Positions 20,921-27,062 of a stretch of DNA of 27,062 bases are shown here, one piece after another; the stretch's first letter is position 1, and each line of letters opens with the position of its first letter. The notes under the pieces are model-generated. The model worked only from the letters and a program-made list of their open reading frames with translations, made no database searches and was not told where the DNA came from. The translations under genes and the position numbers were made by a program. Location: contig NW_021835570.1 in the NCBI RefSeq assembly GCF_006345805.1, positions 1-27,062 on the forward strand. Reading direction: 5' to 3'. This stretch comes from Octopus sinensis. Taxonomy: Eukaryota.

Positions 20921-21479
20921 AAATTGTCGCCATTTTTAATTTCGCGCCAGCGCATTGTTTATTCTTGATTTTGTTCCCTACACAGTATAGTAGGGTCAGT
21001 TGGGCACTGTCTGTGAGAAAATCAGCACCAAGATCCAATTTACTCTGCCAGAAATTTGGAAACGACATGCTATAATACTGCTTGACATTCATGCCAGAAA
21101 CTCCAATACAAAGATTTCAGAGTGTTTGGGTGTCGACCTGAAGAGAGTCCAGAGGACTCGGAAAAGAGTTGGATGAGTCCAATGGTGATTAAAAAGTTAC
21201 AGCAGCTCAGAAAAACTCACTCTGATTGTTCTGATAAGAAAAGAACGATCCTTCCAAGTCAATCAGGTCCATTGCCAGGGACATGGGTGTGTCTGAGTTT
21301 CTTACCAGGCAGGTAGTGCATGAAGACATTCAGTATTTCTCATGCGAGATGAGAAAGGGCCAATTTTTATCCCAAGCCATCAAGGACAAGAGGAAGGACC
21401 ACGCTATGAAGGTTTTGAATAAACTCAAGCAACCCCTCCAACTGAACATGCTTTCGTTTCTCAGATGAGAGAAATTTCT

Positions 21480-22250
21480 TTATTGCCCACAAGGGGCTAA
21501 ACATAGAGGGGACAAACAAGGACAGAACAATGGATTAAGCTGATTATATCAACCCCAGTGCATTACTGGTACTTAATTTATCAACCCCGAAAGGATGAAA
21601 GGCAAATTTGACCTCGGCGGAATTTGAACTCAGAATGTGAAGACAGACAAAATACATATTTCTTTACTGCCCACAAGGGGCTAACACAGAGGGGACAAAT
21701 AAGGACAGAAAAATGGATTAAGTCGATTATATCGACCCCAGTGCGTAACTGGTACTTACTTAATCGACCCTGAAAGTATGAAAGGCAAAGTTGACCTTGG
21801 CAGAATTTGAACTCAGAACGTGAAGACAGACAAAATACCTATTTCTTTACTGCCCACAGGGGCTAAACAAGGACAGACAAACAGATTAAGTCGATTGCAT
21901 CGACCCCAGTGCGTAACTGGTACTTAATTTATCGACCCCGAAAGGATGAAAGGCAAAGTCGACCTTGGTGGAATTTGAACTCAGAATGTAAAGGCAGACG
22001 AAATATCTATTTCTTTACTACCCACAAGGGGCTAAACACAGAGGGGACAAATAAGGACAGACAAACGGATTAAGTCGATTATATCGACCGCAGTGCGTAA
22101 CTGGTGCTTAATTTATCAACCCCGAAAGGATGAAAGGCAAAGTTGACCTTGGCGGAATTTGAACTCCGAACGTAACAGCAGACGAAATACTGCTAAGCAT
22201 TTCGCCCGGTGTGCTAAAGTTTCTGCCAGCTCACCGCCTTTTTATAAAGG
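21480..22250 (-). mobile_element. SINE-B tetramer with 14-bp TSD inside the maT transposase
   Basis: Unit starts at 21475, 21659, 21842 and 22010; single head ends 22238; TGAGAGAAATTTCT at 21466-21479 and 22251-22264. Confidence 0.93.
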
Positions 22251-22628
22251 TGAGAGAAATTTCTGCCAGAATCAGATGGTGGACACGCAGAGCAACAATT
22301 GGCTTGCCGTGTCCCCAGAACATATACCAAGAATGAAAAAGTCAAACACTCAGTCAACATCATGGTGTTTGGTGATATCACTAGTGATGGCAAAATTATG
22401 CCTCCATTCATCTTCCCACATGGCTCCACACTCAACACAGAGGCCTACATCAAGTGCCCGGAGGAGGTAATGCTGCCCTGGGTCAAGAGGGTGGCAGCTG
22501 GCTCACCCTATGTCTAGCAACAGGACCCTGCACCGTGCCACACAGGCAGAACCCAGTCATAGCTGTCAGACAATTTCTGCAACCACATCACCCCTAAAAT
22601 CTGGCCACCTAACTCCCCAGACTGCAAC

Positions 22629-22985
22629 TGGATGGAACCTACACTCGCCTCCTTATGAGAGCTCAAAATCTCTTGTGGAAGCGCCATCCGACCAAAATGC
22701 AAATATATGGGAAACTACCACCTGTGTCACCTCTTGTGAAAGGTAGGAGAGTTCAGTTTGCTGGACATTGTTGTAGAGCTGAAAACGAGGCAATTTCTAC
22801 TCTTCTCCTCTGGAAGCCATCTACTCGCAATACCAGAGGGCGCACACTATCCTACCCTGATGTAATCTCCAGGGATACAGGCATCCAGCAACAGGACCTC
22901 CGTAATGCCATGATGGACCGTGAAGTCTGGCGTAGCATGGTAAATTCCATTGTCTCGACCACGGTCGTACAATGATGATGATGAT
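22629..22985 (+). mobile_element. 5'-truncated RTE/RTEX-like LINE 3' end (ORF C-terminus plus (TGA)n tail)
   Basis: Open frame DGTYTRLLMRAQNLLWKRH...RRVQFAGHCCR...LLLWKP...RGR...DREVWR resembles the post-RT C-terminus of RTE-group ORFs; stop at 22973-22975 runs straight into (TGA)n. Confidence 0.85.
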
Positions 22986-23226
22986 TGATTATTATGTGTG
23001 GGGTGCAGTTGAGTGAGAGACCAGCAAAACTCCTTGTAACACCAAAGATGAACTGAAGGCAAGGATTATGACAGCATTTGCCAACTTAAACAAGGAGATG
23101 GTTCAGAAGAGTTACAGGAGATTCCAAAGTCGTTTGGACACCATGGTTGAAGCCAATGGTGATTTTATTGAATAAATTTACTCTTTAGTATTTCAAGATA
23201 TTTCAATGTAATTTCGGGTAAATATA

Positions 23227-23405
23227 GGTGCAGGAGTGGCTTTGTGGTAAGTAGCTTGCTAACCAACCACATGGTTCTGGGTTCAGTCCCACTGCATGGC
23301 ACCTTGGGCAATTGTCTTCTACTATAGCCTTGCGCCAACCAAAGCCTTGTGAGTGGATTTGGTAGACGGAAACTGAAAGAAGCCCGATGTATATTTGTAT
23401 ATATA
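23227..23405 (+). mobile_element. SINE-A 5' module only
   Basis: GGTGCAGGAGTGGC...GAAAGAAGCCCG followed by (TA)/(GT). Confidence 0.9.
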
Positions 23406-23410
23406 TGTGT

Positions 23411-23765
23411 GTTGAAATTTTTACCATTAAGACTATTCTGCAGAGGCCTGAATAAGTGGAAATCTGAAGGAGCAATATCTGGTGAATATGGAGGGTGGGG
23501 TAACATATCCCAGCCGAGCTGCAGCAATTTTTGTCTGGTTCCCAAAGCATCAAGTGCCGAAAATGAACTTTCTTATCTTCCATCTTAAAGGGTTACAGAA
23601 TTAACACAGGTTATACGAACATAAACCTTCTTCCACGAAAAGATAGCTTAAACTGGGCTCTAAATGGAGGTGTAGCCAAATCCTATTTTATGGACTCAAC
23701 CATGTTCTAAAATATGTCGAAAGGTAAGCTGCTATAAATCGGCAAGAACTTTCCAGACAACCCAA
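23411..23765 (-). mobile_element. Internally deleted mariner: 5' TIR, 5'UTR, transposase N-terminus fused to C-terminal fragment
   Basis: TA|TTGGGTTGTCTGGAAAGTTC at 23765 down to ATG 23583 (MEDKKVHFRHLMLWE), joined out of frame to TRQKLLQLGWDMLPHPPYSPDIAPSDFHLFRPLQNSLNGKNF. Confidence 0.88.
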
Positions 23766-25053
23766 TATCTTGAGAGAAAAGCAGAGCTAGCTTAAACTGT
23801 GCTCTAAATGGAGGTGTAGTCAAATCCTATTTTATGGACTCAAACATGTTTTAAAATAAGTTGAAAGGTAAGCTACTATAAATCAGCACAAACTTTCCGG
23901 ACAACCCAATATCTTGAGAGATAAGCACAGCTAGCTTAAACTGTGCTCTAAATGGAGGTGTAGTCAAATCCTATTTTATGGGCTCAACCATGTTCTAAAA
24001 TAAGTCGAAAGATAAGCTACTATAAATCGGCACGAACTTTCCAGACAACCCAATATCTTGAGAGATAAGCACAGCTAGCTTAAACTGTGCTCTAAATGGA
24101 GGTGTAGTCAAATCCTATTTTATGGGCTCAACCCTGTTCTAAAATAAGTCGAAAGATAAGCTACTATAAATCGGCACGAACTTTCCAGACAACCCAATAT
24201 CTTGAGCGGAAAGCAGAGCTAGCTTAAACTGTGCTCTAAATGGAGGTATAGTAAAATCCTATTTTTTGGACTCAACCATGTTCTAAAATAAGTTGAAAGG
24301 TAAGCTACTATAAATCGGCATGAACTTTCCAGACAACCCAATATCTTGAGAGAAAAGCAGAGCTAGCTTAAACTGTGCTCCAAATGGAGGTGTAGTCAAA
24401 TCCTATTTTATGGGCTCAACCATGTTCTAAAAAGTCGAAAGATAAGGCTACTATAAATCGGCACGAAATTTCCAGGACAACCCAATATCTTGAGAGATAA
24501 GCACAGCTAGCTTAAACTGTGCTCTAAATGGTGTAGTCAAATCCTATTTTATGGCTCAACCTGTTCTAAAATAAGTCGAAAGATAAGCTACTATAAATCG
24601 GCACGAACTTTCCAGACACCCAATATCTTGAGCGGAAAGCAGAGCTAGCTTAAACTGTGCTCTAAAGGAGGTATAGTAAAATCCTATTTTTGGACTCAAC
24701 CATGTTCTAAAAAGTTGAAAGGTAAGCTACTATAAATCGGCATGAACTTTCCAGACAACCCAATATCTTGAGAGAAAAGCAGAGCTAGCTTAAACTGTGC
24801 TCCAAATGGAGGTGTAGTCAAATCCTATTTTATGGACTCAAACATGTTTTAAAATAAGTTGAAAGGTAAGCTACTATAGATTGGCATGAACTTTCCAGAC
24901 AACCCAATATCTTGAGAGAAAAGCAGAGCTAGCTTAAACTGTGCTCTAAATGGAGGTGTAGTCAAATCCTATTTTATGGACTCAAACATGTTTTAAAATA
25001 AGTCGAAAGGTAAGCTACTATAAATCGGCACTAACTTTCCGGACAACCCAATA
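23645..25053 (-). repeat. 144-bp satellite (10 units) made of the mariner 5' end
   Basis: AGCTTAAACTG starts at 23645, 23789, 23933, 24077, 24221, 24365, 24509, 24647, 24787 and 24931; each unit contains GAACTTTCC(A/G)GACAACCCAATA (TIR plus TA). Confidence 0.95.
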
Positions 25054-25074
25054 TATTATAAAATACATATTAAT

Positions 25075-25250
25075 GGGTGTCTGGTGGTTTCTGTCACCCA
25101 CATTTCATCACAGGGTATTGGCTTGCCCTGGAGTAAAATGGAAGGCCACAATTAGCTCAACGGAAGGCCAACTGGCCCAATTACCTAAAGGTGGAATGCA
25201 GTGAGACTGAACTTGAAATCAGCGGGTTACAAAGTAAATGTTTTAAGAGC
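25075..25250 (-). mobile_element. Highly degenerate SINE-A-like 5' module
   Basis: CACAGGGTATTGG...CCTAAAGGTGGAATGCAGTGAGACTGAAC. Confidence 0.55.
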
Positions 25251-25294
25251 ACTGATGTGTCTCTCTCTCTGTAATGGGTATATGTGTGTACACA

Positions 25295-25630
25295 CAGACA
25301 CACACACAAACATATACAAGCATATATACACATATAGACACACATATACAAGCATATATATACACATATAGACACACATATACAAGCATATATATACACA
25401 TATATATACACATATAGACACACATATACAAGCATATATATACACATATATATACACATACAGACACACATATACAAGCATATATATACATATATATATA
25501 CACATATAGACACACATATACAAGCATATATATACACATATAGACACATATATACAAGCATATATATATACACATATAGACACACATATACAAGCATATA
25601 TATACACATATAGACACACATATATAAGCA
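25295..25630. repeat. ~32-34-bp CA/TA-derived minisatellite (ACACACATATACAAGCATATATATACACATATAG)
   Basis: ACAAGCAT anchor recurs about 8 times. Confidence 0.9.
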
Positions 25631-26006
25631 GAGGGGTGTGGTTTGAGGACAGTTTGTTTGGTATTTCTGCAGATTCTCATTCCATCAAGAGGCGTTCCTT
25701 ACTGGCTCAGTTACACACACAAATACATACACACAAGCATATATACATATATCTACATATATTCACATATATGTATATGTGTGTGCGTGTGTATACATAC
25801 ACACACATGCAAATATGATGAGGATGAAGATGATGGTGATGATATATTTATATATCTATCTGTCACTGTCTCCCTGTCTGTTATTATCTCTTTCTCTCTC
25901 TCTCTCCTCTCTCTCTCTCTTTCTCTCTCTCATATATATATATTATATATATATATATATATAATAGATATATATAATATATATACACACCCACACATAT
26001 AATATA

Positions 26007-26441
26007 GGCATAGGAGTGGCTGTGTGGTAAGTAGCTTGCTAACCAACCACATGGTTCCGGGTTCAGTCCCACTGCGTGGCACCTTGGGCATCTGTCATCT
26101 ACTATAGCCATGGGCCGACCAAAACTGTGTGAGTGGATTTGGTAGATGGAAACTGAAAAGAAGCCCATCGTATATATGTATATATATATATATATGTATG
26201 TATGTATGTATGTGTACGTATATGTTTGTGTTTGGCCCCCACCCAACATCGTTTGACAACCGATGGTGGTGTGTTTACGTGCCCGTAACTTAGCGATTCA
26301 GGAAAAGTGACCGATAGAATAAGTACTGGGCTTACAAGGAATAAGTCCTGGGGTTGATTTGCTCGACCAAAGGCGGTGCTCCAGCATGGCCTCAGTCAAA
26401 TGACTGAAACAAGTAAAAGAGTAAAAGACAGGAGTAAAGAG
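26007..26441 (+). mobile_element. Full-length SINE-A
   Basis: GGCATAGGAGTGGCTGTGTGGTAAG head through GACTGAAACAAGTAAAAGAG tail. Confidence 0.92.
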
Positions 26442-26477
26442 CATATATATATGTGTGTATATATATATATATATCAT

Positions 26478-26520
<43 letters not shown>

Positions 26521-26521
<1 letters not shown>

Positions 26522-26737
26522 TTTCTTGTATAGGCAGAAGTCTTGAAATTTTGAAGGGTGGGTGCTAGTTGATTATATCAGCCCATGTACCAAACTAATA
26601 CTTATTCCATTGACCCCGAAAGGATGAAAGATGAAGTCAACACCTCGTTGAAATTTGAACCTAGAACATGCAGAACTGAAAGAAATGGTGCTCAGCATTT
26701 TGTCCAGTTTGTTAACAATTCTGCCAGCTTGCTGCCC
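26521..26737 (-). mobile_element. Degenerate full-length SINE-B variant (same 3' end type as 10795-11215)
   Basis: TTTTCTTGTATAGGCAGAAG...GACCCCGAAAGGATGAAAG...TTCTGCCAGCTTGCTGCC. Confidence 0.75.
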
Positions 26738-26757
26738 TCTCTCTCTCTCTCTCTCTC

Positions 26758-26870
26758 ATCATCATCATCATCATATCATTTAACATCCACTTTCCATGTT
26801 GGCATTTGTTAGATGCTTTGAATGATGACTGGTAAGCCAGGAGGTGGCACCAACCTCCAATCTGATGTAT
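26758..26870 (-). mobile_element. Degenerate RTE-like 3' end
   Basis: (CAT)n-TTTAACATCCACTTTCCATGTTGGCAT. Confidence 0.65.
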
Positions 26871-27012
26871 ACCTAAATTATAATATATCATCATCATCAT
26901 CATCGATGTTAAACAATGATGATGAGGAGGATAATGACAGACATACACACATGCACACTGTTATATAATATATATATGTATATATATATATATCATCATC
27001 ATCATCATCATC

Positions 27013-27043
<31 letters not shown>

Positions 27044-27062
27044 TTATATATATATATATATA

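What the first reader, a model, noticed from the sequence alone, without database searches (positions are those of the whole stretch)
23645..25053. Satellite made of mariner ends: ten direct copies of TA + TIR + subterminal DNA
The innermost unit is the real 5' end of the deleted mariner and leads to its ATG. The other units repeat the first ~125 bp plus a ~19-bp spacer (GCTCTGCTTTTCTCTCAAGA on the minus strand). The array stops exactly at TIR + TA (25051-25053), and the outer flank differs from the spacer. A simple local duplication of end plus flank would make them match. This suggests the array formed elsewhere and was cut and pasted by transposase at its outermost TIR. An intronic cluster of ten transposase sites could act as a transposase sink, a rearrangement hotspot or a seed for a new satellite family. 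The 144-bp unit is near nucleosome-core length, possibly by chance.
Basis: partly seen in the sequence, partly recalled or inferred. Interest (0 to 1): 0.75.

Follow-up and report, generated by a model that had tools for sequence, protein, structure and literature searches.

The report
Tandem array of mariner transposon ends
A dead, internally deleted mariner transposon has had its first 122 bases, its TA target dinucleotide and a 20-base linker copied head-to-tail seven to ten times; this is a small transposon-derived minisatellite of an already known kind, with no sign of a function.

Summary
Window 23644-25053 (minus strand) carries ten direct 144-bp units. Each is TA + 122 nt of a genuine mariner 5' end + a 20-nt linker; the innermost unit lacks the linker and runs into the transposase ATG. 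The array ends exactly at TA+TIR, and the outer flank differs from the linker.

The TIR is real. The same 33 nt ends more than 120 mariner and MITE copies in an unrelated metagenome host.

New findings:
- Units 3-5 are a substitution-free copy of units 6-8, with a clean recombinant unit. The array is therefore a 7-unit array plus one 432-bp unequal exchange.
- That block differs only by about 10 small indels. This looks like unpolished consensus, so 'ten' could be seven.
- The element has no 3' TIR in the window and keeps only 15 + 44 out-of-frame codons.
- The linker is not significantly similar to the element.

Two insertions 20 bp apart plus a deletion, or an end duplication with filler DNA, also fit. 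Import by transposase is possible but not required.

The source genome could not be reached, so the other-loci test was not done. This is a new member of a known kind (transposon-derived tandem repeats). Interest is modest.

The parts
23644..25053 (-). Whole array: ten direct units (u1 outermost to u10 innermost). Each is TA + 122 nt of mariner 5' end; a 20-nt linker follows u1-u9 only.
   Evidence: TRF period 144, 9.9 copies; TIR and linker searches with 0 matches in shuffles; unit listing and alignment at 93% mean column identity.
25019..25053 (-). Outermost TA (25052-25053) and the roughly 33-nt TIR of unit 1. This is the sharp outer boundary of the array.
   Evidence: Homology to the other units stops right after the TA. 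The TIR is 94-97% identical to the ends of mariner/MITE copies in JGI metagenome contigs.
24911..24930 (-). Example of the 20-nt linker GCTCTGCTTTTCTCTCAAGA, between unit 1 and unit 2. The eight others start at 23768, 23912, 24056, 24200, 24344, 24488, 24626 and 24766, in three sequence variants.
   Evidence: It occurs nowhere else in the window. Its similarity to the element's own downstream sequence is not significant (p 0.08-0.16).
24345..24766 (-). Units 3-5: a 3-unit block copied from units 6-8 by one unequal exchange. Unit 5 is a u8/u2 recombinant. The block carries about 10 small indels and looks like low-quality consensus.
   Evidence: u3 vs u6: 0 substitutions, 3 indels. u4 vs u7: 0 substitutions, 4 indels. 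u5 matches u8 at 8/8 diagnostic columns (25-77) and u2 at 3/3 (110-137).
23913..24344 (-). Units 6-8, the template block. u7 and u8 differ by one substitution, so they come from an earlier single-unit duplication.
23644..23767 (-). Unit 10: the TA and the true 5' end of the element, with no linker. It has 5 private substitutions; the other units have 0-2.
23411..23643 (-). Rest of the element: 5' UTR, ATG at 23583, 15 N-terminal codons, an out-of-frame internal deletion near 23540, then 44 codons of the C-terminal catalytic region (TRQKLLQLGWDMLPHPPYSPDIAPSDFHLFRPLQNSLNGKNFN). It is cut off at about 23411.
   Evidence: ORFs; homology to mariner/SETMAR-annotated proteins at E about 1e-18; tblastn; 76-79% nucleotide identity to elements in ENA contigs that I recognise as Hsmar2-like.
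23228..23410 (+). SINE copy with a TA/TG tail that abuts the truncated 3' side of the mariner. The mariner sequence does not resume beyond it.
   Evidence: Sequence reading. The same SINE occurs repeatedly in the window.

Best explanation
This is a transposon-derived minisatellite. A 144-bp module made of 20 nt of non-element DNA, the TA target dinucleotide and the first 122 nt of a mariner (complete TIR included) was amplified head-to-tail by unequal exchange or slippage between the repeated mariner ends. It sits next to the real 5' end of an internally deleted, 3'-truncated, non-coding mariner copy.

Shown:
- the anatomy of the units;
- that the TIR is a genuine mariner TIR;
- that the last growth step was one 432-bp (3-unit) unequal exchange between units 8 and 2;
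- that an earlier step duplicated a single unit (u7/u8);
- that types a, b, c and the innermost unit are about equally distant (7-12 substitutions per unit). This suggests an early burst to four or more units, then a long quiet period, then recent duplications.

Inferred: the founding event was a direct dimer of two mariner 5' ends 20 bp apart. I think this most likely arose at this locus, in one of two ways:
- a second insertion of the same family at a TA 20 bp upstream, followed by a deletion from its position 122 to its 3' end;
- repair of a transposase-induced break that re-copied the end with filler DNA.

The array most likely does nothing. It is neutral DNA that could seed a satellite.
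For: - Array statistics and unit structure.
- Genuine TIR and TA as target dinucleotide.
- Mariner identity of the remnant.
- Recombinant unit 5 and substitution-free block.
- The innermost unit has 5 private changes and shares none with other units, as expected for an array edge that no longer takes part in exchange.
- The same 27-kb window holds at least six other short tandem arrays of dispersed SINE-like repeats with 112-189-bp units. Tandem amplification of interspersed repeats is therefore routine in this genome and needs no transposase.
- The element cannot encode transposase and has no 3' TIR here.
- Literature: TIRs and UTRs are the commonest transposon parts to become satellite monomers (PMC9659126, PMC12628747). 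Dimers from double insertion keep target DNA in the junction and expand by unequal exchange, as in R1 with its 33-nt spacer and the 13-19-copy hobo array (PMC5932611).
Against: - The founding dimer is not observed, only inferred.
- Double insertion plus a deletion needs two events, and filler DNA ending in TA needs a coincidence.
- The origin of the linker is unknown. It matches nothing else in the window.
- Whether the early burst happened here or at another locus cannot be told from one copy.
- The 3-unit block could be an assembly error rather than a biological exchange.
- No data on transcription, small RNAs or chromatin exist, so 'no function' is a default and not a result.
Confidence: 0.6

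Rival explanations
1. The array was built at another locus, where the 20-nt linker was the genomic flank of the element. Transposase then cut at the outermost 5' TIR and at a 3' TIR and pasted the array plus element here. Array-bearing copies would then form a mobile family.
For: - The outer boundary falls exactly at TA+TIR, and the outer flank is unlike the linker.
- Every unit keeps TA and an almost intact TIR, with 0-3 mismatches in 25 nt.
- The element is a short deletion derivative, the kind that often amplifies as a MITE. Relatives with the same TIR do form roughly 125-bp MITEs in another host.
- Types a, b, c and u10 are about equally distant, which is compatible with an array that was already multi-unit when it arrived.
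Against: - There is no 3' TIR, so no TSD pair can be checked.
- The precise boundary is equally expected if the outermost unit is an ordinary insertion made here.
- At least the last growth steps are unequal exchange within this sequence.
- A search with a peptide read across the linker-TIR junction found nothing among 1.84 billion representative proteins. This is weak evidence, since such short ORFs are rarely called as genes.
- Among 120 loci of the related family in another host, no direct-TIR array was seen; the only same-strand pair was a 375-bp segmental duplication.
Confidence: 0.3
2. The linker is ordinary element sequence (positions 123-142 of the family consensus). The array then arose from repeated same-orientation insertions of the element into a TA in its own 5' UTR, or from duplication of purely internal sequence. 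On this view the innermost unit is the odd one out.
For: The linker and the innermost unit's downstream sequence share CTTTTC....AAGA at the same spacing. Under this model the outer flank would not be expected to match the linker.
Against: - That resemblance is within chance (p 0.08-0.16 against shuffles).
- Elsewhere the innermost unit is about 91-94% identical to the other units, so a local drop to about 50% needs special pleading.
- The innermost unit's continuation leads to the ATG with homology to related mariners, so it is the bona fide element sequence.
Confidence: 0.08
3. Part of the array is an assembly artefact. The 3-unit block 24345-24766 was created by a mis-join of long reads inside the repeat, and the true allele has 7 units.
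For: - Across the two units of the block upstream of the crossover there are 0 substitutions but 7 small indels; the whole block has about 10, mostly deletions. The other seven units are all exactly 144 bp. Real divergence gives more substitutions than indels, so this pattern points to unpolished long-read consensus.
- Contig names such as '_5x_l' in an ENA long-read metagenome assembly show that low-coverage long-read contigs exist in the collection the window may come from. This is circumstantial only.
Against: - A true, very recent duplication would also be left unpolished, because reads map to the cleaner copy.
- The recombinant unit 5 is what a real unequal exchange produces.
- The seven other units are distinct by substitutions and cannot be artefacts.
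Confidence: 0.3

Closest known systems
Xstir tandem repeats derived from the Xmix MITE in Xenopus (Hikosaka & Kawahara 2004, as summarised in PMC12628747 and Table 1 of PMC9659126)
   Same: Tandem repeats whose monomer derives from the terminal (TIR) part of a DNA-transposon derivative. MITE, array and composite forms coexist.
   Different: Xstir is a genome-wide family seen in all three forms; here only one locus could be examined. The proposed Xstir mechanism joins neighbouring elements through a stem-loop. Here every monomer also keeps the TA and a 20-nt non-element linker.
Tandem transposon dimers from double insertion that expand by unequal exchange: P element, hobo (13-19 copies in one Drosophila line), R1 arrays with a 33-nt rDNA spacer (McGurk & Barbash 2018, PMC5932611)
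   Same: Target-site DNA is preserved between direct copies of a transposon end. The array then grows from a single dimer by unequal exchange. It lies in euchromatin near genes.
   Different: Those arrays consist of whole or nearly whole elements joined head-to-tail (3' end-TSD-5' end). Here the monomer is only the first 122 nt, so an extra deletion is required, and the junction contains no 3' TIR.
miDNA4, a Tc1/mariner MITE of Xenopus tropicalis carrying an internal satellite of variable copy number (Scalvenzi & Pollet 2014, as summarised in PMC12628747)
   Same: A Tc1/mariner-superfamily non-autonomous element with a tandem array inside it. It is the model for how such arrays spread by transposition and later lose their TIRs.
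   Different: In miDNA4 the repeated unit is internal, captured DNA lying between two TIRs. Here the repeated unit is the TIR-bearing end itself, and a second TIR is missing.
Bari1 heterochromatic cluster of Drosophila melanogaster (about 80 tandem copies; cited in PMC9659126 and PMC5932611)
   Same: A Tc1/mariner-superfamily element turned into a tandem array.
   Different: The units are complete 1.7-kb elements, the cluster is heterochromatic, and rolling-circle amplification has been proposed. Here the units are 144-bp end fragments in a gene-bearing region.
Hsmar2-like mariners and their hymenopteran relatives
   Same: The TIR begins TTGGGTTG... after TA. The 5' UTR is about 180 nt. The N terminus reads M-E-(D/E)-K-K-x-HFRH and the C-terminal motif is PHPPYSPDIAPSDFHLF. 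Nucleotide identity in the C-terminal coding part is 72-79%. The name Hsmar2 rests on my recollection of its consensus, not on an annotated hit.
   Different: The subterminal 5' UTR sequence is not alignable between hosts. The copy here is a deletion derivative with an amplified end.

Membership tests
mariner (Tc1/mariner superfamily) | Terminal inverted repeat of about 28-33 bp, recognisable at both ends | tested here: inconclusive
   The 5' TIR is present ten times and is 94-97% identical over 33 nt to the ends of more than 120 mariner/MITE copies, which occur there as inverted pairs. No 3' TIR of this element exists in the window; the element is truncated at about 23411.
mariner (Tc1/mariner superfamily) | TA target-site duplication flanking the element | tested here: inconclusive
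   TA directly precedes the outermost TIR (25052-25053) and every internal TIR. In the related family the bases upstream of TATTGGG are variable, so TA is the target dinucleotide. The second TA cannot be checked without the 3' end.
mariner (Tc1/mariner superfamily) | Transposase with N-terminal HTH and DD34D catalytic domain | tested here: inconclusive
   Only 15 N-terminal and 44 C-terminal codons remain, and they are out of frame. The remnant hits mariner/SETMAR-annotated proteins and proteins carrying PF01359 at E down to 2e-18. Pfam itself gives no hit on so short a remnant.
Transposon-derived tandem repeat (minisatellite / proto-satellite) | Head-to-tail monomers homologous to part of a transposable element | tested here: met
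   Ten 144-bp units, of which 122 nt are the mariner 5' end.
Transposon-derived tandem repeat (minisatellite / proto-satellite) | Evidence of unequal exchange or homogenisation (higher-order units, recombinant monomers) | tested here: met
   A 3-unit higher-order duplication with recombinant unit 5, and the near-identical pair u7/u8.
Satellite DNA family in the strict sense | Long arrays and/or many arrays across the genome | not testable with these tools
   The source genome is not searchable. No match to the unit in the viral or prokaryote-genome collections.
Mobile array-bearing non-autonomous element (miDNA4-like) | Array enclosed by two inverted TIRs with a TSD | tested here: not met
   No inverted partner TIR within the window on either side. 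Loss by the truncation at about 23411 cannot be excluded.
Mobile array-bearing non-autonomous element (miDNA4-like) | Copies at several loci with different flanks and variable unit number | not testable with these tools
   Exact-ORF look-ups and a search with the junction peptide found nothing, but these are weak proxies for a nucleotide search of the genome.

The most novel reading that the evidence does not exclude
The array-bearing deletion derivative is a mobile family in which every monomer carries its own TA and a complete transposase-binding, cleavable end. Transposase could then excise and paste arrays of any length by pairing any of the direct 5' ends with one 3' end. That would be a satellite spreading through the genome by cut-and-paste and seeding new arrays wherever it lands.
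Probability: 0.15. Interest if true: 0.65.

Novelty: new member of a known kind. Interest (0 to 1): 0.3.

Why it matters
It is a clear, datable snapshot of how a DNA-transposon end becomes a tandem repeat. The progenitor end is still attached, the monomers keep TA+TIR, and one growth step can be reconstructed to the recombinant monomer. This makes it a useful illustration of the transposon-to-satellite route.

If genome-wide data showed the same linker-TIR junction at many loci, it would be an example of a satellite that carries a usable transposon end in every monomer. As a single locus it has no demonstrated consequence for the host gene nearby.

The indel-only block is also a practical warning about consensus quality in this contig.

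Tried and rejected
1. Finding other copies of the family through proteins. The remnant transposase retrieved only mammalian-type (Hsmar2-like) and hymenopteran-type mariners, not same-species copies.
2. Exact look-ups of array ORFs and of the remnant ORF: not on record.
3. A 38-aa peptide spanning the linker-TIR junction against 1.84 billion representative proteins: 0 hits.
4. A metagenome scan with the TIR returned more than 120 loci, but from another host. Only the 33-nt TIR is shared and the coding sequence is about 72% identical. These loci authenticated the TIR and the TA, and showed MITEs but no arrays.
5. Identifying the organism or fetching an orthologous locus through the nearby exon gave only low-complexity hits. 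The LINE fragment's best hits are unnamed ENA contigs, and the three long ones (L125-L127) share no repeats with the window.
6. A unit 21-mer against the prokaryote-genome and viral collections: 0 matches.
7. Testing whether the linker derives from the element's own downstream sequence: not significant.
8. Using the outer flank as a repeat with in-window 'empty-site' paralogues. It is an old, diverged SINE tail region with no informative paralogue.
9. Rfam on 21000-27062 gave only sub-threshold microRNA-model hits on TA/CA microsatellites; rejected as low-complexity noise.
10. A literature search for the TIR sequence found no relevant paper.
11. The nucleosome-length idea has nothing to support it. 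At 144 bp the unit is shorter than a core particle.

Full report
**What is there**

Tandem Repeats Finder reports a single array at 23644-25054 with period 144, 9.9 copies, 92% matches and 2% indels. On the minus strand a 25-nt TIR probe (TTGGGTTGTCTGGAAAGTTCGTGCC) matches nine times with at most 3 mismatches. All matches are in the array and in one orientation, and 100 shuffles gave none. The tenth copy has a 1-nt insertion and appears in the unit listing.

The 20-nt linker GCTCTGCTTTTCTCTCAAGA occurs nine times, only in the array. Each unit is TA + 122 nt (TTGGG...GTTTAAGCTA) + linker = 144 bp, and mean column identity is 93%.

The innermost unit (u10, TA at 23767-23766) has no linker. It runs through a 5' UTR of about 180 nt to ATG at 23583. 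The outermost unit (u1) ends with its TIR at 25051 and TA at 25052-25053. Immediately beyond, the flank (TATTATAAAATAC...) is unrelated to the linker.

**Is it really a mariner end?**

The remnant downstream of u10 encodes MEDKKVHFRHLMLWE. After an out-of-frame internal deletion near 23540 it encodes TRQKLLQLGWDMLPHPPYSPDIAPSDFHLFRPLQNSLNGKNFN.

This remnant hits proteins that sources name SETMAR or mariner Mos1 transposase, and proteins carrying Pfam PF01359, at E down to 2e-18. Pfam itself finds nothing in so short a piece.

The contigs encoding the best hits carry elements whose consensus I recognise as Hsmar2-like (TIR TATTGGGTTGGCCAAAAAGTTC). They are 76-79% identical to the window in the C-terminal coding part.

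These share only the first ~33 nt with the window's units, at 94-97% identity, and their coding sequence is about 72% identical. They therefore belong to another host. Many are inverted pairs about 105 nt apart, giving MITEs of about 125 bp. One pair 1.2 kb apart encloses a decayed transposase whose N terminus reads EENKVHFRHLML.

In 141 such ends the two bases upstream of TATTGGG vary. TA is therefore the target dinucleotide and the TIR starts at TTGGG. Every unit of the array carries TA plus a complete, nearly intact TIR.

**State of the element**

Only 15 + 44 codons remain, and they are out of frame. The mariner sequence stops at about 23411 against the tail of a SINE (23228-23410) and does not resume beyond it. 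No inverted partner of the TIR exists anywhere in the window apart from the ends of a different mariner at 14940-18022. The element is non-autonomous and, as it stands, immobile.

**How the array grew**

The pairwise comparison is informative:
- u3 and u6 differ by 0 substitutions and 3 indel events.
- u4 and u7 differ by 0 substitutions and 4 indel events.
- u7 and u8 differ by 1 substitution.
- u1 and u9 differ by 3 substitutions.
- The types a (u1, u2, u9), b (u4, u5, u7, u8), c (u3, u6) and u10 differ from each other by 7-12 substitutions.

Unit 5 is a clean recombinant. At the eight diagnostic columns 25-77 it matches u8, and at the three diagnostic columns 110-137, linker variant included, it matches u2.

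An array u1-u2-c-b-b-u9-u10 that underwent one unequal exchange between u8 and u2, offset by three units (432 bp), gives exactly the observed order a-a-c-b-b'-c-b-b-a-u10. The ten-unit array is thus a seven-unit array plus one recent event.

u10 has five private substitutions and shares none of them with other units, while the others have 0-2. This fits an array edge that no longer takes part in exchange.

**A quality warning**

The copied block (24345-24766) differs from its template almost only by small indels, eight deletions and two insertions. All seven other units are exactly 144 bp. Real divergence produces several substitutions per indel, so this pattern looks like unpolished long-read consensus.

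It fits either a true, very recent duplication that polishing could not resolve, or a mis-join within the repeat. At least seven units are distinct by substitutions and are secure. 'Ten' needs read support.

**The linker and the founding event**

A tandem duplication in place of flank + end would leave the linker upstream of the outermost unit, and it is not there. Three other routes also give an outer flank unlike the linker and an outer boundary at TA+TIR:
1. A second insertion of the same family at a TA 20 bp upstream in the same orientation, followed by a deletion from position 122 of the outer copy to its 3' end. The linker would then be the 20 bp of target DNA between the two insertion sites.
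2. A single re-copying of the end during repair of a transposase-induced break, with filler DNA.
3. The linker being element sequence.

Route 1 has published precedent. P, hobo and R1 dimers keep target DNA in the junction and then expand by unequal exchange. The R1 spacer is 33 nt, and one hobo dimer grew to 13-19 copies (PMC5932611).

I tested route 3. The linker and u10's downstream sequence share CTTTTC....AAGA, but shuffling gives p = 0.08-0.16, so nothing supports homology.

**Context**

The same 27 kb holds at least six other short tandem arrays of dispersed SINE-like repeats:
- 112 bp x 13 at 1087-2563;
- 160 bp x 2.7 at 10795-11228;
- 184 bp x 3 at 14272-14822;
- 113 bp x 2 at 15160-15390;
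- 173 bp x 2.9 at 15551-16068;
- 183 bp x 4 at 21474-22190.

Tandem amplification of interspersed repeats is therefore routine in this genome and needs no transposase.

A spliced exon lies on the same strand at 13411-14225, with the acceptor ...tttttgcag|CAC and the donor GAAG|gtacgt. The array is 9.4 kb upstream of it, so 'intronic' is plausible, but no upstream exon was identified.

No tool identified the organism. The exon has no homologue beyond low-complexity hits. The LINE fragment's best matches are unnamed ENA contigs, and the long ones come from another organism. From memory the repeat content resembles a cephalopod genome; that was not tested.

**Comparison with what is known**

Reviews list TIRs and UTRs as the transposon parts that most often become satellite monomers. 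They describe Xstir/Xmix, miDNA4 and the Bari1 cluster, and they name unequal exchange, break repair and double insertion as mechanisms (PMC9659126, PMC12628747, PMC5932611).

This array works like those cases. It is unusual only in that each monomer keeps the TA and the complete TIR together with a non-element linker, and in that the progenitor end is still attached. I file it as a new member of a known kind.

**Verdict**

The best explanation is a transposon-end minisatellite grown by unequal exchange from a founding dimer, probably formed in place, and functionally inert (confidence 0.6). The mobile-array reading stays open at about 0.3 for the origin, and at about 0.15 for the stronger claim of a self-mobilising satellite family.

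The decisive data are nucleotide searches of the source genome with the junction probes, a family consensus, orthologous loci, and long reads across the array.

Noticed in passing
window 14940-18022 (+): A second, different mariner copy. Its TIRs are TATTAAGCTTTCTGGAAAGTTC... and ...GAACTTTCCAGATAATCTAATA, and its ATG is near 15127. It is riddled with nested insertions: SINE arrays at 15160-16068 and a foldback element at about 16630-17554. Its C-terminal coding part is about 72% identical to the array-bearing element, and its 5' end is not amplified.
   Followed up: partly
window 16630-17554; also 18035-18111 and about 8468-9015: A foldback or MITE-like element with long inverted arms (63-78 nt at 90-92% complementarity) bordered by ATC/GAT microsatellites. 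It is inserted inside the second mariner. A related terminus follows that mariner's 3' end, and similar sequence appears near 8.5-9.0 kb.
   Followed up: partly
window 22299-23175 (+): Remnants that look, by eye, like another Tc1/mariner-type transposase (…IMVFGDITSDGKIMPPFIF… and …RRFQSRLDTMVEANGDFIE*). They are interrupted by a LINE 3' fragment at 22655-22975, which has 60-91% amino-acid identity to unnamed ENA proteins. Pfam gave no hit on the short pieces.
   Followed up: partly
window 13411-14225 (-): An exon of about 815 bp with canonical AG acceptor and GT donor. It encodes an acidic, repetitive peptide with APVE and APSEE repeats. No homologue was found beyond low-complexity matches.
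   Followed up: partly
window 1087-2563, 10795-11228, 14272-14822, 15160-15390, 15551-16068, 21474-22190: Six further short tandem arrays (2-13 units of 112-189 bp) built from dispersed SINE-like repeats. Tandem amplification of interspersed repeats seems to be a general habit of this genome.
   Followed up: no
window 24345-24766: About 10 small indels and almost no substitutions relative to the template block 23913-24344. This probably reflects unpolished long-read consensus, so other near-identical repeats in the contig may also carry indel errors.
   Followed up: yes
L005-L124 (JGI metagenome contigs Ga0157362-Ga0157367): An unidentified eukaryotic host in these metagenomes carries more than 120 copies of a mariner/MITE family. 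Its first 33 nt are nearly identical to the window's TIR, while the coding sequence is only about 72% identical. Most copies are MITEs of about 125 bp. The transposase C terminus resembles bee-annotated mariners. The TIR is thus far better conserved across hosts than the rest of the element.
   Followed up: partly
window 23228-23410 (+) and 25080-25260: A young SINE copy abuts the truncated 3' side of the mariner without a target-site duplication, which implies a deletion or rearrangement there. The outer flank of the array is the TA-rich tail region of an old, diverged SINE copy.
   Followed up: partly
window 25280-25630: A complex CA/TA-rich minisatellite (periods 34, 46 and 80) lies 230 bp outside the array. 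It produces sub-threshold Rfam microRNA-model hits that are low-complexity noise.
   Followed up: yes
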